DNA of 62,974 nt, the filler included, from Octopus bimaculoides (Eukaryota), in NCBI RefSeq assembly GCF_001194135.2. It is 4 parts of 4 records of this genome, joined end to end, with 100 filler letters (N's around TTAATTAATTAA, not from the genome) between each part and the next. Parts side by side here need not be neighbours in the genome. Positions count along the whole stretch, not along the records: positions 54,088 to 62,974 come from NW_026423379.1; 3 more parts are not named here. The stretch is one strand, 5' to 3'. A model generated the notes under the pieces. The model was given only the letters and a program-made list of their open reading frames with translations. It was not told the origin of the DNA and searched no databases. The position numbers were made by a program, and so were the translations under genes. Of the stretch, positions 54,088 through 62,974 are shown in pieces (position 1 is the stretch's first letter; each line of letters begins with the position of its first letter).

Positions 54088-54310
54088 TGTCATGGAAAAA
54101 GTGTGACTGTAAAAATGCAGAATTATCGGAGTAATGAGTATTCAAAAAAGTATGTATGTATAGAAATGCATGAATGAAGTCTTTAAGGTTTAAGATTCAA
54201 ATTAAGGAAGTGCAATAATAGTGTTTAGTAGTTCAAAACTGTGAGTAGTGAAATGCAGAATGAGGTCGGCTGATCGTGAGAATCAAATATTGATTGCTTC
54301 GCTAAAATTT

Positions 54311-54740
54311 GCAGGTGGTATGGGTTATTTCCCTTGGGTTACTTAAATAAATTAGTAATATGAAGTAGATAGAAGGATCCATTGGAAGGGCCCTATTATC
54401 GATTTTTTTCAACAATCTAAGTATGTCACGAGGTTTCCAGACATGAGTTCTACTCACGTGTCAAATAAAGTATAAAAGTGACATTGTCTGCAAAAATTAG
54501 AAATAGGACACACAAAAAATCAATATTCAAAGTAATCGAATATGAACAATGAAATAGGCTATTTCCCTTGAGTGCTTGACAAAAATATTTTACAGGTGCT
54601 ATGGGTTATTTCCGTTGGGTGTTTCAAAAAATGTTATGAAGGAGATATAAAGGTCCCTTCCAGGGGCCGTATTATCGATTTTTTTCAACAATCTAAGTAT
54701 GTCATGATGTTTCCAGACATGAGTTCTATTCACATGTCAA
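54311..54740. repeat. Diverged direct repeat, period about 280 bp
   Basis: caggtg.tatgggttatttcc...tattatcgatttttt.caacaatctaagtatgtca...tttccagacatgagttcta occurs at about 54311-54465 and 54593-54740. Confidence 0.85.
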
Positions 54741-54769
54741 GTTTCATCAAAATCGACAAAACGATGTAG

Positions 54770-54817
54770 GAGGAGTTAGCTAACAACGCCACAAACAAAC
54801 ACACACCGATTTTCCAC
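54770..54817 (+). other. Candidate non-coding first (5' UTR) exon of the same gene
   Basis: Donor-like cac|GTATGT at 54818, about 210 nt upstream of the 55030 acceptor. No ATG is in frame with the downstream exon. The 5' boundary is a guess. Confidence 0.35.
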
Positions 54818-55029
54818 GTATGTAGTATATAGTATATAAAGAGATAACAGAAAGAAAACGCAGAAATAAACATTGCTACTTTTTTCCTCTAACAAAATCA
54901 TACTTTCCATCTCTCTCTCTCTCTCTTCCTCCTCCAACCAACCCATTCTATGCCTCCCACTTCTTTGTAATAGAAATGATCTAATACACTCCTGCTTCTT
55001 TTCTCTTCTTGCGTGCCTCTTTTTGCCAG

Positions 55030-55167
55030 CGGAGGTCCACGAAGTTAAAGAGCCCGATAAATTAAGAAAGCTCCCTGACATTACTAATGTGGGTTATTAT
55101 ATAATGTCTAAACAATCGAAAACAAAGAGGAAAAAGATGAGCGAACCCAGAACCCCTAAAGTGTTTG
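55030..55167 (+). CDS. Exon of an unidentified multi-exon gene; probably contains the start codon (ATG at 55104, MSKQSKTKRKKMSEPRTPKVF)
   Basis: Acceptor cttgcgtgcctctttttgccAG and donor tttg|GTAAGT. 138 nt with only one open frame (EVHEVKEPDKLRKLPDITNVGYYIMSKQ...PKVF). It ends in phase 1 and joins the next exon as G|AC = Asp. Confidence 0.8.
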
Positions 55168-55431
55168 GTAAGTGGATGAAACGCAATATATTCTCTCTGT
55201 TTGTGTCTGTTTGTTTCTCTGTCTGTCTTTCAGTCTACCTTTCTCTGTTTTTTTTTTTATGTTGTTGTTGATGTTGTTGTCTGGCCTCCAGGATTTTGTT
55301 GATTGTTAATTTATTATCGACAGATCGATAAAATACAAAGTTAGCTTCGGCGAGATATGAACACGTAACATAAAAGTTTCGGAACAAATAGCAAAAGATA
55401 TTTACAGATGCTTTCATGCTTCTGTTAATCC

Positions 55432-55651
55432 GTGGAGGCGCAATGGCCCAGTGGTTAGGGCAGTGGACTCGCGGTTATAGGATCGCGGTTTCGATTCCCA
55501 GACCGGGCGTTGTGAGTGTTTATTGAGCGAAAACACCAAAAAGCTCCACGAGGCTCCGGTAGGGGATGGTGGTGGCGAACCCTGCTGTACTCTTCCACCA
55601 CAACTTTCTCTCACTCTTACTTCCTGTTTCTGTTGTGCCTGTAATTCAAAG
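55432..55651 (+). mobile_element. tRNA-headed SINE family B (possibly the octopus OR type), young copy running into a gap
   Basis: gtggaggcgcaatggcccagtggttagggcag...ggtttcgattccc with clear A and B boxes. Confidence 0.9.
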
Positions 55652-56473
55652 NNNNNNNNNNNNNNNNNNNNNNNNNNNNNNNNNNNNNNNNNNNNNNNNN
55701 NNNNNNNNNNNNNNNNNNNNNNNNNNNNNNNNNNNNNNNNNNNNNNNNNNNNNNNNNNNNNNNNNNNNNNNNNNNNNNNNNNNNNNNNNNNNNNNNNNNN
55801 NNNNNNNNNNNNNNNNNNNNNNNNNNNNNNNNNNNNNNNNNNNNNNNNNNNNNNNNNNNNNNNNNNNNNNNNNNNNNNNNNNNNNNNNNNNNNNNNNNNN
55901 NNNNNNNNNNNNNNNNNNNNNNNNNNNNNNNNNNNNNNNNNNNNNNNNNNNNNNNNNNNNNNNNNNNNNNNNNNNNNNNNNNNNNNNNNNNNNNNNNNNN
56001 NNNNNNNNNNNNNNNNNNNNNNNNNNNNNNNNNNNNNNNNNNNNNNNNNNNNNNNNNNNNNNNNNNNNNNNNNNNNNNNNNNNNNNNNNNNNNNNNNNNN
56101 NNNNNNNNNNNNNNNNNNNNNNNNNNNNNNNNNNNNNNNNNNNNNNNNNNNNNNNNNNNNNNNNNNNNNNNNNNNNNNNNNNNNNNNNNNNNNNNNNNNN
56201 NNNNNNNNNNNNNNNNNNNNNNNNNNNNNNNNNNNNNNNNNNNNNNNNNNNNNNNNNNNNNNNNNNNNNNNNNNNNNNNNNNNNNNNNNNNNNNNNNNNN
56301 NNNNNNNNNNNNNNNNNNNNNNNNNNNNNNNNNNNNNNNNNNNNNNNNNNNNNNNNNNNNNNNNNNNNNNNNNNNNNNNNNNNNNNNNNNNNNNNNNNNN
56401 NNNNNNNNNNNNNNNNNNNNNNNNNNNNNNNNNNNNNNNNNNNNNNNNNNNNNNNNNNNNNNNNNNNNNNNNN

Positions 56474-56503
56474 GCCCTAACCACTGGGCCATTGCGCCTC
56501 CAC
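56474..56503 (-). mobile_element. SINE family B head emerging from a gap
   Basis: gccctaaccactgggccattgcgcctccac followed by (atgt)n. Confidence 0.8.
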
Positions 56504-56588
56504 ATGTATGTATGTATGTATGTATGTATGTATGTATGTATGTATGTATGTATGTATAAATCGTTTCGCTCTTTTACTCTTTTCATAG

Positions 56589-56655
56589 ACTCCAAGTTCT
56601 ACCATGCACTCCGACCGCGCAAAATCAGCATACGTGATATCAAAGTCTATCCCAT
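56589..56655 (+). CDS. Internal coding exon (D)SKFYHALRPRKISIRDIKVYP(M)
   Basis: Acceptor tcgctcttttactcttttcatAG and donor cat|GTAAGT. 67 nt, phase 1 to 2, exactly bridging the phases of the flanking exons. Confidence 0.85.
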
Positions 56656-57124
56656 GTAAGTCCATATTATACATGTAACACCTTATACAAATGACATATT
56701 ATACATGTGACATATTATACATGTGACACCCATAAATTCACACCCACCGCCCCAGCAACATCATCATCATCGTTTAACGTCCGCCCTCCATGCTAGCATG
56801 GGTTGGACNNNNNNNNNNTCGACGTCGTAAGTGACGGAGTGCCAACAACAACAACAACAACAACAACATGATGTTCATGTTGTGTCCAGCCATGTTGCCT
56901 GTAGTAACTCTCTGCATGGTAAGTTTCAGTCAAAAATCACTACGATCTTGAATAAAAGGCTCACTCAGTTAATTCATCTGAAGATTAACCAGTTATTTAA
57001 CAGGGCTGATAGTTGTGGCTCCAAAGTTGGAGATACTATTCATCGTATTTTCGATAAATAGTCTCCCACGCCAAATACGCGACTTGTCGCTTCGAGTTGT
57101 ATGTATGTATGTATGTCATTATTC

Positions 57125-57426
57125 AGTTGAGCACTCCACAGACACGTGTACCCTTAACGTAGTTTTCGGGGATATTCAGCGTGACACAGAGTGTGACAAG
57201 GCTGACCCCTTTGAATTACAGGCAAAACAGAAACAGGAAGTAAGAGTGAGAGAAAGTTGTGGTGGAAGAGTACAGCAGGGTTCGCCACCACCATCCCCCT
57301 GCCGGAGCCTCGTGAAGCTTTAGGTGTTTTCGCTCAATAAACACTCACCGCCCGGTCTGGAAATCGAAACCGCGATCCTATGACTGCGAGTCCGCTGCCC
57401 TAACCACTGGGCCATTGCGCCTCCAC
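57125..57426 (-). mobile_element. SINE family B
   Basis: Reverse complement about 95% identical by eye to 55432-55651. Confidence 0.9.
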
Positions 57427-58044
57427 ATGTATGTATGTATGTATGTATGTATGTATGTATNNNNNNNNNNNNNNNNNNNNNNNNNNNNNNNNNNNNNNNN
57501 NNNNNNNNNNNNNNNNNNNNNNNNNNNNNNNNNNNNNNNNNNNNNNNNNNNNNNNNNNNNNNNNNNNNNNNNNNNNNNNNNNNNNNNNNNNNNNNNNNNN
57601 NNNNNNNNNNNNNNNNNNNNNNNNNNNNNNNNNNNNNNNNNNNNNNNNNNNNNNNNNNNNNNNNNNNNNNNNNNNNNNNNNNNNNNNNNNNNNNNNNNNN
57701 NNNNNNNNNNNNNNNNNNNNNNNNNNNNNNNNNNNNNNNNNNNNNNNNNNNNNNNNNNNNNNNNNNNNNNNNNNNNNNNNNNNNNNNNNNNNNNNNNNNN
57801 NNNNNNNNNNNNNNNNNNNNNNNNNNNNNNNNNNNNNNNNNNNNNNNNNNNNNNNNNNNNNNNNNNNNNNNNNNNNNNNNNNNNNNNNNNNNNNNNNNNN
57901 NNNNNNNNNNNNNNNNNNNNNNNNNNNNNNNNNNNNNNNNNNNNNNNNNNNNNNNNNNNNNNNNNNNNNNNNNNNNNNNNNNNNNNNNNNNNNNNNNNNN
58001 NNNNNNNNNNNNNNNGCAGTGGGAATGAATCCGGAACCATGTGG

Positions 58045-58222
58045 TTCGTAAGCAAGCTCATCATCGTTTAACGTCCGCTTTCCATGCTAGCATGGGTTGG
58101 ACGATTTGACTGAGGACTGGTGAAACCAGATGGCTACACCAGGCTCCAATCTGATTTGGCAGAGTTTCTACAGCTGGATGCCCTTCCTAACGCCAACCAC
58201 TCCGAGAGTGTAGTGGGTGCTA
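58045..58222 (-). mobile_element. Short 3'-end copy of the RTE element (others at about 31125-31350 +, 36040-36290 +, 62000-62175 +, 56760-56808 -, 35140-35230 -, 40180-40290 - and 41270-41370 -)
   Basis: Contains gttaggaagggcatccagctgtagaaac...ccaacccatgctagcatggaaagcggacgttaaacg(atg)n; the first part is also present at the end of the RTE 3' UTR (39780-39837). Confidence 0.75.
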
Positions 58223-58544
58223 GTCTAGTTTTATATTTTTCAATGTTTCTTTTTTTCTCTCAATTTTTTTGAATGTGTTTCTTGCTGTTTGAAATAACAC
58301 AATTCCTATTTCTCTCATAAAAGTTTCTAGACCTTCACAGTCTCATTTTCATCTTCAGTGATGAGATATTGCCAGCATGTTTTGTTGTCACTTCACAATA
58401 GGCAAAGCCAATGTGATTGATTCAGACATAAACACTAGGATTTTAGGAGATGAGGAATTATTTACATTTATTTTTTTACATTTGACTGATACTTGTCCTC
58501 ATCCTGCCTGTTGCCAACACAACGTTCTTTGTCTTCTATTTCAG

Positions 58545-58628
58545 GAAACCATTGGTTCCGGCAGAATGTCCTTCTGACAGTCTTTCGCTGTCGAAGTCTG
58601 AGGAAACCCTGCTGGCTACCAAGGACTA
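58545..58628 (+). CDS. Internal coding exon (M)KPLVPAECPSDSLSLSKSEETLLATKD(Y)
   Basis: Acceptor gttctttgtcttctatttcAG and donor cta|GTAAGT. 84 nt, phase 2 to 2; junction codons AT|G and TA|T. Confidence 0.85.
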
Positions 58629-58669
58629 GTAAGTTGTGCTCTGAGGCAGTTTTATTGACGTCATTATCG

Positions 58670-58807
58670 TTGTCTGTCTGTCTGTCTGTCTGTCTCTCTA
58701 TCTCTCTTTCTCTCTCTCTCTTTCTCTCTCTCTCTCCCTCTCTCTCTCCCTCTTTCTTTCCCTCTTTCTCTCTCTCCCTCTCTCTCTCTTTCTCTCTCTC
58801 CCTCTCC

Positions 58808-58848
<41 letters not shown>

Positions 58849-59747
58849 CCTCTCTCCCTCTCTCTCTCTTTCTCTCTCTTTCTCTCTCTTTCTCCCTCTC
58901 TCTCTTTCTCCCTTTCTCCCTTTCTCCCTCTCTCTTTCTCTCTCTCTTTCTCTCTCTCTCCCCCTCTCTCTCTCCCTCTTTCTTTCCCTCTTTCTCTCTT
59001 CCCTCTCTCTCTCTTTCTCTATCTCCCTCTCTCTCTCTTTCTCTCTCTCCCCCTCTCTCTCTTTCTCTCTCTCTCTCCCTCTCTCTCTCCCTCTCTCTCT
59101 CCCTCTCTCTCTCCCTCTCTCTTTNNNNNNNNNNNNNNNNNNNNNNNNNNNNNNNNNNNNNNNNNNNNNNNNNNNNNNNNNNNNNNNNNNNNNNNNNNNN
59201 NNNNNNNNNNNNNNNNNNNNNNNNNNNNNNNNNNNNNNNNNNNNNNNNNNNNNNNNNNNNNNNNNNNNNNNNNNNNNNNNNNNNNNNNNNNNNNNNNNNN
59301 NNNNNNNNNNNNNNNNNNNNNNNNNNNNNNNNNNNNNNNNNNNNNNNNNNNNNNNNNNNNNNNNNNNNNNNNNNNNNNNNNNNNNNNNNNNNNNNNNNNN
59401 NNNNNNNNNNNNNNNNNNNNNNNNNNNNNNNNNNNNNNNNNNNNNNNNNNNNNNNNNNNNNNNNNNNNNNNNNNNNNNNNNNNNNNNNNNNNNNNNNNNN
59501 NNNNNNNNNNNNNNNNNNNNNNNNNNNNNNNNNNNNNNNNNNNNNNNNNNNNNNNNNNNNNNNNNNNNNNNNNNNNNNNNNNNNNNNNNNNNNNNNNNNN
59601 NNNNNNNNNNNNNNNNNNNNNNNNNNNNNNNNNNNNNNNNNNNNNNNNNNNNNNNNNNNNNNNNNNNNNNNNNNNNNNNNNNNNNNNNNNNNNNNNNNCT
59701 CCCCTCTCTCTCCCCTCTCTCTTCTCTCCCCCCTCTCTCTCAGTCTC

Positions 59748-59817
<70 letters not shown>

Positions 59818-59838
59818 GTCTGTCTGTCTGTCTGTCTT
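58670..59838. repeat. Intronic compound (CT)n / (TCTA)n / (TCTG)n tract with a gap
   Basis: Direct inspection; this tract is the source of the spurious 451-aa ORF. Confidence 0.95.
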
Positions 59839-59842
59839 TCAG

Positions 59843-59912
59843 TTATAAAGGTCAGAAGCATTCTGGTTATTATGACTTTGTGAAGAATACTCGAACAGAC
59901 CGAAACAGATAC
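59843..59912 (+). CDS. Internal coding exon (Y)YKGQKHSGYYDFVKNTRTDRNRY
   Basis: Acceptor tctgtctgtctttcAG and donor tac|GTAAGT. 70 nt, phase 2 to 0; the other two frames contain stops. Confidence 0.85.
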
Positions 59913-60375
59913 GTAAGTACAGACGCCTACCCGCTTTGTCATCACCCCTTTCTCGTTCCTCATTTTCATCATTACGCCCTCCATTAAATGGAGTCACAGG
60001 ATCAGACTGAGAGATTCACAGAATCGGTAGAGCGTCGGACAGTTTTGTTCTAGCTCTTTGTGTTTTGAGTTCAAATTTCACTGAGGAAACCTTTGATTTT
60101 TACCATCGTTGGGCACCACAAAATAATAATTTCTTCTATAGACACAAGGCCTGGAATTTTGAGGTAGGGAACTAGTCGATTACATCGACCCCAGAACTCA
60201 GCTGGTACTTAATTTATCGACCCCGAAAGGATGAAAGGCAAAGTCAACCTCGGTGTATATTGAATTCTGATCATAAAAACAGACAAAACGCTGTTAACAA
60301 TAATAATAATAATAATAATAATAGTAGTAGTAGGAGACCCCCTTCTGTCATGAATGACCATGGGATTGCAATGGG

Positions 60376-61244
60376 TAAACTGTCGCCATTTTATACCTTT
60401 AATTTCGCGCATGTACATTGTTTGTTTTTGAGTTTGTGGACTACACAGTATAGTAGGTTCAGCTGGGCACCATCTCTGAGAAACATCATCATGACGCTAT
60501 TCACTCTGCAAGAAATTCAGAAAGGACATGCTGTACTACTTGGCATTCGCGCTGGAACCTCCAATACGAACAGATGGTGAACACACAGAACAACCGTTGA
60601 CTTGCCATGTCCCCAAAACATGTACCGAGAGCGATAAAAATCAAACATCCAGTCAACATCATGATGTTTCGAGTGATTACTAGCGATGGTGACGTTATGC
60701 CTCATCTTTCCACACGGCCTCACACTCAACACAGAGGCCTACATCAAATGCCTGGAGGAGGTAGTGTTGCCCCAGGTCAAGAGGGTGGCTGCTGGAAGAC
60801 CCTATGTCTGGCAACAGGAGTCTGCACCATGCCACACAAGCTGGATAACCCAATCATGGCTGTTAGACAATTCCTGCGACTGCATCAGCCCTAACATCTG
60901 GCCACCCAACTCACCAGACTGCAACCCCCTTGATTATTATGTGTGGGGTGCAGTTGAGCGAGAGATCAACAAAACTCCTTGTAACACTGAAGGTTAACTA
61001 AAGGCAAAGGATTATGGCAGCATTCACCAACTTAAACAAGGAAACTGTCCAGAAGAGTTGTAGGAGATTCCAAAGTCGTCTGGAGGCTATGGTTGAAGCC
61101 AATAGCGATTTTATTGAATAAATTTACTCTTTAGTCTTTCAAGATATTTTTATGTAATTTTGGTAAATATATGTTAAAATGAGATGTCAGTGTTATTTTC
61201 ATTTTTGCCTAATTTAGACGACAGTTTATTCACCGCACCCTGTA
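60376..61244 (+). mobile_element. Tc1/mariner DNA transposon, DD37D (maT-type), internally deleted and frameshifted, inside an intron
   Basis: VWQQESAPCHT...WPPNSPDCNPLDYYVWG, with 37 residues between the second (here D to E) and third catalytic acidic residues. The right end cgacagtttattcaccgcaccctg is followed by TA, and a partial inverted match taaactgtcg lies at 60376. Confidence 0.85.
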
Positions 61245-61396
61245 TATCCTTGATAATTTGATTCTTACATCGTGCACGTTTATATTGCTGTATTGTGATA
61301 TATCTGAGGTATTATGTGAGGATTATTGGAACAGGTGTAGGAAATTTATATTTGATATATCATTGATTTGTTCTTGTTGTCTAATTAATTAAACAG

Positions 61397-61526
61397 ATTT
61401 GCAAGAGACTAGTCAGGAGGCTGTGCTTCTTCATTAAGGCCATGAGAGAGGAAAAAAATGCTATAATGTTGGCGAAATATGCCAGTTATGTCTCAAAATT
61501 AAAACCCAGATCTGCTGGTAGCGCAT
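61397..61526 (+). CDS. Internal coding exon ICKRLVRRLCFFIKAMREEKNAIMLAKYASYVSKLKPRSAGSA; gene continues beyond the window
   Basis: Acceptor tgttcttgttgtctaattaattaaacAG and donor cat|GTAAGT. 130 nt, open in phase 0 as the upstream exon requires. Confidence 0.82.
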
Positions 61527-62271
61527 GTAAGTAGAGAAAAAGCAGTTTTTGTGTGAATGTAAATAAACTGGAGTTGTAGAACTGTTCATTGAGAAAAACA
61601 TTCTCATACATAGCCATATTTGAGTGTCCACAACACATACATTCATGCATACACACATAGGTGCGCACATTCATACATTCGTACATGCATTGTTGGCACT
61701 CCGTCGCTTACGACGTCGAGGGTTCCAGTTGATCCGATCAACGGAACAGCTTGTATTTACCTACATGTACTTTGAAGGTACGTCTCAACACTTTTTCGCC
61801 ACCATCTTCTTTCTCTCTCCTCTCTCTCCTCTCTTTTTTTCTGATTGGGGTACCCATCTATCCCTTCTACTGCAAGGTACCTGTTTCTGTCCCTATACTC
61901 ACACCCTTAACTCTACACCTGGCACAAAACCACGTCCCTCTATACCACTTCCGCATCAGTTGAGGTGTTTTTGTCACAAGTTACTTGGTGATCTCAGTGG
62001 AAACTGGTGCCACATAAGCATCCAGTACATTCTGTAAAGTGATTGGCATTAGCAAGGGGCATACAGTGACAGAAACCATGCATAGAGAGCAGAGATTGGT
62101 ACAGTATTCTGCCTCATCAGCTCCAATGAAATTATCCAACTCATGCCATCATGGAAAACAGACGTTAAATGTTCATGATGACGAAATTGATTTAGCTGAA
62201 CATATGGTGGTTGTGGAGTTGGGTCAAACGTAGTGGACAATCACAATTTTACATAGATCTAGGATCTTATA

Positions 62272-62567
62272 GTAGAGGCGCAATGGCCCAATGGTTAGGG
62301 CAGCGGACTTGCGGTTTCGATTCCCAGACCGGGCGCTGTGAGTGTTTATTGAGCGAAAACACCTAAAAGCTCCACGAGGCTCCGGCAGGGGATGGTGGCG
62401 AACCCCTGCTGTACTCTTTCACCCCAACTTTTTCTCACTCTTTCTTTCTGTTTCTTGAGTAACGCTGCGATGGACTGGCGTCCCGTCCAGCTGGGGATGG
62501 GGGGGAACACGTACGCCATAGAAACCGGGAAACCGGGCCCATGAGCCTGGCTAGGCTTTGAAAAGGC
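62272..62567 (+). mobile_element. SINE family B, internally deleted
   Basis: Family B head plus the tail gccatagaaaccgggaaaccgggcccatgagcctggctaggctttgaaaaggcg. Confidence 0.88.
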
Positions 62568-62659
62568 GACGTTTACGTTTACTAGGACCTTATAAAATGT
62601 CTCAGGGTTCTCCAATAAATAAGTTTGTATAATCTGAATGCCGTTTGAAAGGTATTTTA

Positions 62660-62884
62660 CTTTGTCTGTCCATCTGTCTCTCTTTCTCTCTCTGTCTTTT
62701 TCTCTGTTTGTCTGTCTGTCTGTCTCTCTGGCTTCCACCTTACGTTACATGTAATGACCACAAGCACTACAAACCACCCCGAAATAGCGACTACCTCTAT
62801 TTTTTTTCAGTAAATATCTCAATATATCTGTCTCTTTCTGTCCCTGTCTGTCTGTCTGTCTCTCTTTCTCTCTCTGTCTTTTTC

Positions 62885-62915
<31 letters not shown>

Positions 62916-62974
62916 CTCTGGCTTCCACCTTACGTTACATGTAATGACCACAAGCACTACAAACCACCCCGAAA
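62660..62974. repeat. 190-bp tandem repeat running off the window end
   Basis: gcttccaccttacgttacatgtaatgaccacaagcactacaaaccaccccgaaa is identical at 62731 and 62921. Confidence 0.9.

What the first reader, a model, noticed from the sequence alone, without database searches (positions are those of the whole stretch)
55030..61526. Hidden five-exon gene encoding an unrecognised basic protein
Seen: five short exons, all with GTAAGT donors and pyrimidine-rich AG acceptors, whose phases chain exactly (1,2,2,0,1). The spliced product from ATG 55104 is MSKQSKTKRKKMSEPRTPKVFDSKFYHALRPRKISIRDIKVYPMKPLVPAECPSDSLSLSKSEETLLATKDYYKGQKHSGYYDFVKNTRTDRNRYICKRLVRRLCFFIKAMREEKNAIMLAKYASYVSKLKPRSAGSA..., 138 aa with no stop. 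It has an NLS-like KTKRKK and a probable basic amphipathic helix (ICKRLVRRLCFFIKAMREE). The ORF track does not show it as a unit. Inference: this is the N-terminal part of a real gene that may be lineage-restricted or fast-evolving; I recognise no domain in it.
Basis: partly seen in the sequence, partly recalled or inferred. Interest (0 to 1): 0.78.

Follow-up and report, generated by a model that had tools for sequence, protein, structure and literature searches.

The report
Already-annotated orphan octopus gene fragment
The five spliced exons are real and encode a small, very basic protein. It is not hidden: it is the RefSeq gene model LOC106881742 of Octopus bimaculoides, an uncharacterised protein with no detectable relative anywhere, lying on a short, gap-filled, unplaced scaffold.

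Summary
The five exons, their GTAAGT donors, pyrimidine-rich AG acceptors, phases 1,2,2,0,1 and the 138-aa stop-free product are exactly as described. None of the four gaps touches an exon.

The chain is far from chance:
- Only 16 of 100,000 shuffles stay open.
- GTAAGT occurs 7 times on the + strand and 0 on the - strand, against 1.9 expected.
- Exons 1, 4 and 5 are each open only in the frame the chain needs.

The gene is not hidden. The peptide is 100% identical to XP_014787719.1, "uncharacterized protein LOC106881742", of Octopus bimaculoides (143 aa). The piece is bases 1-8887 of unplaced scaffold LGKD02128518.1. A sixth exon beyond a 2.9-kb gap adds FISML and a stop. That ending is uncertain.

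Nothing else resembles the protein: no Pfam family, no PDB sequence, and no hit among 1.84 billion representative proteins. A control search showed that the database does hold other octopus proteomes. The structure model is low-confidence.

Verdict: a real, already catalogued, taxonomically restricted gene of unknown function. It is probably a small basic nuclear protein, but that is inference only. Interest is low.

The parts
55030..55103 (+). Upstream part of exon 1, either 5' UTR or possibly coding. A strong acceptor (tttctcttcttgcgtgcctctttttgccag|CGG) sits just before 55030. The gene's frame stays open back to a TAA at 54867. A 5-codon uORF (MWVII*, 55087-55104) overlaps the main ATG as TAATG.
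   Evidence: read directly from the sequence
55104..55167 (+). Coding exon 1 (64 nt). The ATG has A at -3. It encodes MSKQSKTKRKKMSEPRTPKVF and the first base of the next codon (D22). Donor TTG|GTAAGT.
   Evidence: identical to XP_014787719.1
56589..56655 (+). Coding exon 2 (67 nt, phase in 1, out 2). Acceptor ctcttttactcttttcatag, donor CAT|GTAAGT.
58545..58628 (+). Coding exon 3 (84 nt, phase 2 to 2), the acidic Ser-rich part. Acceptor ttctttgtcttctatttcag, donor CTA|GTAAGT. The read-through frame hits a stop at once.
59843..59912 (+). Coding exon 4 (70 nt, phase 2 to 0), with only one open frame. Its acceptor tract is the end of a (CTAT)n/(CTGT)n microsatellite. Donor TAC|GTAAGT.
61397..61526 (+). 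Coding exon 5 (130 nt, phase 0 to 1), the basic helical part ICKRLVRRLCFFIKAMREEKNAIMLAKYASYVSKLKPRSAGSA. Only one frame is open. Stops lie 4 codons before the acceptor and 2 codons after the donor (CAT|GTAAGT).
61527..62974 (+). Start of intron 5. It runs off the piece into a 2896-N gap (scaffold 8888-11783). Exon 6 of the RefSeq model lies outside the window at scaffold L001 11884-11900 (FISML, stop). No bridging exon with usable signals lies in this stretch.

Best explanation
This is the protein-coding gene LOC106881742 of Octopus bimaculoides (RefSeq model XP_014787719.1). It is a U2-type spliced gene with short exons on unplaced scaffold LGKD02128518.1.

Shown:
- The exon chain is real in the sequence, is statistically non-random, and matches the RefSeq model exactly.
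- The product is very basic overall: pI 10.2, with 34 K+R against 12 D+E.
- It has three parts: a basic N-terminus carrying KTKRKK (residues 1-45, pI 10.9), an acidic Ser/Pro-rich linker (46-75, pI 4.5), and a basic helix-prone C-terminal part (76-138, pI 10.3).
- It has no detectable relative and no known domain.

Inferred, with low confidence. The protein is a small, largely disordered, taxonomically restricted nuclear protein. The K-[KR]-x-[KR] cluster would take it into the nucleus through importin-alpha. The basic helical C-terminus would bind nucleic acid or an acidic partner. RKIS (PKA-type) and TP/SP sites in the N-terminal part are candidate phosphorylation sites.

The 3' end is unresolved. 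Either the protein is complete at 143 aa, or the 2.9-kb gap before exon 6 hides an exon and the annotated stop is an artefact.
For: - Exons, donors, acceptors, phases and the 138-aa product were verified.
- The stop-free chain arises in only 16 of 100,000 shuffles, and the other five frames are full of stops.
- GTAAGT occurs 7 times on + and 0 on -.
- Exons 1, 4 and 5 are open only in the required frame.
- The exon side of the donors is non-consensus (TTG, CAT, CTA, TAC, CAT) while the intron side is a perfect GTAAGT. I infer that this is the compensation expected when coding sequence constrains the exon side.
- The match to XP_014787719.1 is 100% over 138 of 138 residues. The gene call is at scaffold 1017-11900, and the piece equals scaffold 1-8887.
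- From my own knowledge of the NCBI eukaryotic annotation pipeline, not checked here: purely ab initio Gnomon models are kept only if they hit Swiss-Prot. A model with no homologue therefore probably has at least partial transcript support.
- Orphan status rests. Control one search shows that O. vulgaris and chromosome-level O. bimaculoides proteins are in the database.
Against: - No transcript evidence could be examined here.
- The protein cluster has a single member on a single contig. No transcript-derived or second-annotation copy was seen, and the protein has only a UniParc identifier in UniRef.
- There is no homologue even among annotated O. vulgaris proteins, so no conservation supports coding function.
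- The structure model is poor: mean pLDDT 46.9 and pTM 0.25.
- The NLS and the amphipathic helix are pattern matches only, and the helix moment is reached by 5% of shuffles.
- A short uORF overlaps the start codon.
- Exon 6 has an internal-exon look: a strong acceptor, a GTAGGT donor at L001 12008, and another frame open across all 124 nt. That fits a mis-phased model. However, an open frame of that length arises in 25% of shuffles.
Confidence: 0.7

Rival explanations
1. The 138-143 aa are a fragment of a larger gene. Its recognisable, conserved domains would lie in the 2.9-kb gap, beyond the scaffold ends, or upstream of the acceptor at 55029. The FISML stop would be an artefact of a missing exon.
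For: - The scaffold is only 12,269 bp and about 40% N.
- Exon 6 (L001 11884-12007) has a strong acceptor and a GTAGGT donor. It is open for 41 codons in the frame that needs one extra exon of length 1 mod 3.
- A stop 107 nt before a used donor would invite nonsense-mediated decay (established knowledge).
- The frame is open for 24 codons between the acceptor at 55029 and the ATG.
Against: - The 41-aa alternative reading of exon 6 has no relative at all.
- Its openness is not significant, since 25% of shuffles give an open frame.
- No bridging exon lies in 61527-62974, and no convincing upstream coding exon lies in 54088-55029.
- No longer protein containing this sequence exists in the databases.
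Confidence: 0.25
2. The locus is transcribed and spliced but not translated into a functional protein. It would be a lncRNA or UTR exons, or a very young de novo ORF under no constraint. In the extreme case the model is a gene-finder artefact.
For: - No homologue exists anywhere, not even in another octopus proteome.
- There is no domain and no confident fold.
- A uORF overlaps the ATG.
- Exon GC (0.427) does not differ from intron GC (0.425).
- Only one annotation source carries the protein.
Against: - A 138-codon stop-free chain across five independently delimited exons has p of about 1.6e-4.
- Three exons are open only in the needed frame.
- Stops lie immediately outside exons 2, 3 and 5.
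- Donor strand asymmetry is 7:0.
Confidence: 0.1
3. The exons derive from repeats or transposable elements (exonised repeats) rather than from a host gene.
For: - The introns are packed with SINE copies, microsatellites and a mariner-like relic.
- The exon 4 acceptor tract is a microsatellite.
- The exon 2 acceptor shares a 15-mer (ctcttttactctttt) with the repeat-like end of the scaffold.
Against: - The spliced protein hits no transposase or other multi-copy protein in 1.84 billion representatives.
- The real TE relic in intron 4 found 72 relatives at once.
- No exon is part of a repeat family within the scaffold.
Confidence: 0.04

Closest known systems
XP_014787719.1, uncharacterized protein LOC106881742 [Octopus bimaculoides] (RefSeq/Gnomon model)
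   Same: Same exons, same scaffold (LGKD02128518.1), same start codon.
   Different: The model adds a sixth exon outside the window (FISML, stop) for 143 aa in total.
Taxonomically restricted ('orphan') genes in general
   Same: No homologue in any database searched, short, basic, predicted mostly disordered, and no domain. These are features commonly reported for orphan genes (my own knowledge).
   Different: Restriction to Octopus, or to this species, is not shown. Only annotated or predicted proteins could be searched, not the genomic DNA of other cephalopods.
RGS-domain proteins (a lead from memory only)
   Same: By eye, LCFFIKAMREEKN...AIMLAKYASYVS and ADRILTKYLAPDQNPMK loosely recall the F-W...A..IY..YL pattern of RGS helices.
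   Different: The Pfam scan at E up to 10 gave no family at all, RGS included, and there was no PDB sequence hit. Not a member on present evidence.

Membership tests
RefSeq gene LOC106881742 (identity, not family) | Same protein sequence encoded at the same locus | tested here: met
   100% identity and 100% query coverage. The sequence was read back. The gene call is at L001 1017-11900, and the piece equals L001 1-8887.
U2-type spliceosomal protein-coding gene | GT...AG introns with a consensus donor and a polypyrimidine acceptor, and exon phases that keep one frame open | tested here: met
   Five of five donors are GTAAGT and four of four acceptors are Y-rich AG. Phases are 1,2,2,0,1 with no stop. 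Shuffle p is about 1.6e-4.
U2-type spliceosomal protein-coding gene | Spliced transcript observed | not testable with these tools
   No RNA-seq or cDNA resource for octopus is on hand. There is only the indirect inference from NCBI pipeline rules.
Any Pfam-A family or domain | Profile HMM match at or near the gathering score | tested here: not met
   0 families at E up to 10.
RGS domain (PF00615), a lead from memory | Match to the RGS profile, or to a solved RGS structure by sequence | tested here: not met
   No Pfam hit at E up to 10. No PDB sequence hit at E up to 10.
Classical monopartite NLS cargo | K-[KR]-x-[KR] basic cluster in an exposed region | tested here: met
   KRKK lies within KTKRKK at residues 6-11, in the coil N-terminus of a low-confidence model. 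This is a pattern match only.
Classical monopartite NLS cargo | Importin-alpha-dependent nuclear localisation | not testable with these tools
   Needs a localisation experiment.
Orphan / taxonomically restricted gene | No detectable homologue outside a narrow lineage | tested here: inconclusive
   No hit among 1.84 billion representatives or in the 5.8-billion-cluster index, and octopus proteomes are shown to be present. Unannotated genomic DNA of other cephalopods could not be searched.

The most novel reading that the evidence does not exclude
LOC106881742 is a genuinely octopus-specific gene, born de novo or evolving extremely fast. It would be translated into a small basic nuclear protein with a lineage-specific role, and its recent origin could be traced in repeat-rich DNA.
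Probability: 0.25. Interest if true: 0.35.

Novelty: already known. Interest (0 to 1): 0.15.

Why it matters
It matters little beyond housekeeping. The check shows that the first-stage reader can recover a correct multi-exon gene model from raw sequence, because its exon chain matches the RefSeq model base for base. The gene itself is already catalogued and is one of many uncharacterised lineage-restricted models in octopus genomes. The useful by-products are two. First, the annotated 3' end (FISML, stop) may be an artefact of a 2.9-kb gap. Second, the protein has no homologue even among annotated O. vulgaris proteins, so it could serve as a small test case for the study of orphan-gene origin once gap-free assemblies and RNA-seq are consulted.

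Tried and rejected
- Pfam scan at E up to 10: nothing.
- PDB sequence search at E up to 10: nothing.
- Word-indexed search of 5.8 billion clusters and full HMMER of 1.84 billion representatives: only the protein itself.
- Search with the alternative 41-aa reading of exon 6: no candidates.
- Exact-sequence look-up for other contigs encoding the protein: only the RefSeq scaffold.
- AlphaFold2 without an alignment: mean pLDDT 46.9, too poor for a fold search, so none was run.
- Scan for a phase-fixing exon in 61527-62974: none.
- Scan for an upstream coding exon in 54088-55029: nothing convincing.
- Rfam at E up to 1, looking for intronic snoRNAs or miRNAs that would mark a host gene: only sub-threshold miRNA-family hits on (TGTA)n/(TG)n microsatellites.
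- ARAGORN: no tRNA.
- Literature search for LOC106881742 and XP_014787719: no paper.
- An RGS-like reading from memory: rejected for lack of any profile support.
- An apparent seventh exon at L001 12251-12269: rejected. I recognise it from memory as the start of an abundant octopus repeat, and 6 open codons mean nothing.
Full report
**What the piece is.** Window 54088-62974 is identical to bases 1-8887 of a 12,269-bp unplaced scaffold of Octopus bimaculoides (LGKD02128518.1, assembly GCA_001194135.2). Window coordinate = scaffold coordinate + 54087. The scaffold has five N-runs. Four lie inside the finding. The fifth, of 2896 N, starts directly after the piece's edge.

**Gaps first.** None of the four gaps touches an exon:
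- 55652-56473 lies in intron 1.
- 56809-56818 and 57461-58015 lie in intron 2.
- 59125-59698 lies in intron 3.

The closest exon edge is 115 nt from a gap, so no codon is read across N. The gaps are flanked by repeats: inverted SINE copies, (TGTA)n and (CT)n-like tracts. That explains why assembly broke there. The five exons sit on four separate contigs, in order, on one strand and with compatible phases, which argues that the scaffolding is right. A hidden exon whose length is a multiple of three cannot be excluded.

**The observation.** The exons are 55104-55167, 56589-56655, 58545-58628, 59843-59912 and 61397-61526. All are followed by GTAAGT, and the four internal ones are preceded by pyrimidine-rich AG acceptors. 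Cumulative phases are 1,2,2,0,1. The 415-nt product translates to the quoted 138 aa without a stop.

**Is it more than chance?**
- Only 16 of 100,000 shuffles of the spliced sequence remain stop-free. The other five frames carry 6-10 stops each.
- GTAAGT occurs seven times on the + strand and never on the - strand, with 1.9 expected per strand. Five of the seven are the exon ends. Of the other two, the one at 56827 lies in a repeat also present inverted at about 61700.
- Exons 1, 4 and 5 are each open in one frame only, the one the chain requires.
- In-frame stops lie 0-2 codons past the donors of exons 2, 3 and 5, and 4 codons before the acceptor of exon 5.
- The exon side of the donors is non-consensus (TTG, CAT, CTA, TAC, CAT) while the intron side is perfect. 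I read this as compensation under coding constraint, which is an inference.

**What it is.** The 138 aa match one database protein at 100% identity and coverage: XP_014787719.1, "uncharacterized protein LOC106881742 [Octopus bimaculoides]", 143 aa. So the gene is not hidden. NCBI's Gnomon found the same chain.

To my knowledge, NCBI keeps a purely ab initio Gnomon model only if it has a Swiss-Prot hit. This protein hits nothing, so the model probably has at least partial RNA-seq support. I could not check that.

**The 3' end.** The model's sixth exon lies outside the window, after the 2896-N gap. It reads tttttttatag|TT ATA AGC ATG TTA TAG, giving FISML and a stop at scaffold 11900. That exon also has a good donor (AAG|GTAGGT at 12008). 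It is open for 41 codons in the frame that would need one more exon of length 1 mod 3. This fits a hidden exon in the gap and a longer true protein.

The evidence for that reading is weak, however. An open frame of that length arises in 25% of shuffles, and the 41-aa peptide has no relative. No bridging exon lies in 61527-62974. Both readings stay open.

**The 5' end.** A strong acceptor precedes 55030, and the frame is open from there to the ATG. I found no convincing coding exon upstream on the scaffold. The ATG has A at -3 and is overlapped by a 5-codon uORF (55087-55104, TAATG).

**Relatives and domains.**
- Pfam: no family at E up to 10.
- PDB sequences: none at E up to 10.
- Word-indexed search of 5.8 billion clusters: only itself.
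- Full HMMER against 1.84 billion representatives: only itself.
- The 90% cluster has one member on one contig.

As a control for database coverage, I searched the mariner-like relic of intron 4. It found 72 proteins. They include named proteins from the chromosome-level O. bimaculoides annotation (LOC128250757) and from O. vulgaris, plus ENA and Logan gene calls. The absence of a homologue among annotated octopus proteins is therefore meaningful. Unannotated genomic DNA of other cephalopods could not be searched with these tools.

**The protein.** Overall pI is 10.2, with 34 K+R against 12 D+E.
- Residues 1-45 are basic (pI 10.9) and carry KTKRKK, which fits K-[KR]-x-[KR], plus RKIS and TP/SP sites.
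- Residues 46-75 are acidic and Ser/Pro-rich (pI 4.5).
- Residues 76-138 are basic (pI 10.3).

AlphaFold2 without an alignment gives mean pLDDT 46.9 and pTM 0.25, with helices at 91-112 and 117-128 at pLDDT about 50-60. That is too weak for a fold search. The proposed amphipathic helix has moment 0.62, reached by 5% of shuffles, so support is weak.

**Most likely mechanism (inferred, low confidence).** A small, mostly disordered basic protein is imported into the nucleus through its N-terminal basic cluster. Its basic helical C-terminus then binds nucleic acid or an acidic partner.

**Rivals.**
- A fragment of a larger gene (0.25).
- Spliced but non-functional, or an artefact (0.10).
- Repeat-derived exons (0.04).

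**Verdict.** The gene is already catalogued, so novelty is "already known". Interest is low at 0.15. The decisive tests are RNA-seq junctions, gap closure, and tBLASTn against other cephalopod genomes.

Noticed in passing
window 60607-61122 (+), inside intron 4: Decayed C-terminal half of a Tc1/mariner-type DDE transposase, with two frameshifts and an internal stop (...QQESAPCHTS...SPDCNPLDYYVWG...AAFTNLNKETVQKSCRRFQSRLEAMVEANSDFIE*). The Pfam DDE_3 match is weak (E 0.021). There are 72 relatives at 40-77% identity, including O. bimaculoides LOC128250757, O. vulgaris and the crustaceans Caligus and Scylla.
   Followed up: partly
window 55432-55651 (+), 57209-57426 (-), 62272-62455 (+): Three copies of a SINE with a tRNA-like head (GGCGCAATGGCCCAGTGGTTAGGG...GGTTTCGATTCCC). 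The first two are inverted, with arms 92-99% complementary, and they bracket gap 1 and the region before gap 3. ARAGORN and Rfam do not call them tRNA.
   Followed up: partly
L001 11884-12007 (outside the window, after the 2896-N gap): Exon 6 of the RefSeq model stops after 5 codons. The exon has a GTAGGT donor and another frame open for 41 codons (YKHVIVQSLKTGQMTENKRLSKNMADRILTKYLAPDQNPMK). This may be a mis-phased model caused by the gap. It is not statistically significant and has no homologue.
   Followed up: yes
window 55087-55104 (+): A five-codon upstream ORF (MWVII, stop) whose TAA overlaps the main ATG as TAATG. It could damp translation if the mRNA starts upstream.
   Followed up: no
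window 58670-59124 and 59699-59835: Intron 3 is almost entirely a (CT)n-like low-complexity tract followed by (CTAT)n and (CTGT)n. The microsatellite itself supplies the polypyrimidine tract of the exon 4 acceptor.
   Followed up: no
window 56764-56808 and 58058-58102; also 56819-56840 versus 61693-61725 (inverted): Fragments of other interspersed repeats: TCATCATCGTTTAACGTCCGC..CCATGCTAGCATGGGTTGGAC, two copies 96% alike, and the TCGACGTCGTAAGTGACGGAGTGCCAAC element in both orientations. The latter carries one of the two non-exonic GTAAGT sites.
   Followed up: no
window 62663-62784 versus 62853-62974; 54359-54464 versus 54635-54740: Local direct duplications. One is 122 nt at 91% identity at the very edge of the piece, next to the big gap. 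The other is 106 nt at 88% identity upstream of the gene.
   Followed up: no
L001 12019-12104 and window 56494-56566: Sub-threshold Rfam hits to the mir-297, mir-466 and mir-1277 families fall on (TGTA)n/(TG)n microsatellites and are far below gathering scores. They are artefacts of simple repeats.
   Followed up: yes
window 56568-56588 and L001 12225-12269: The exon 2 acceptor tract shares the 15-mer CTCTTTTACTCTTTT with the last 45 bases of the scaffold. From memory, those bases look like the start of an abundant octopus repeat. The acceptor may have a repeat origin. Not tested.
   Followed up: no
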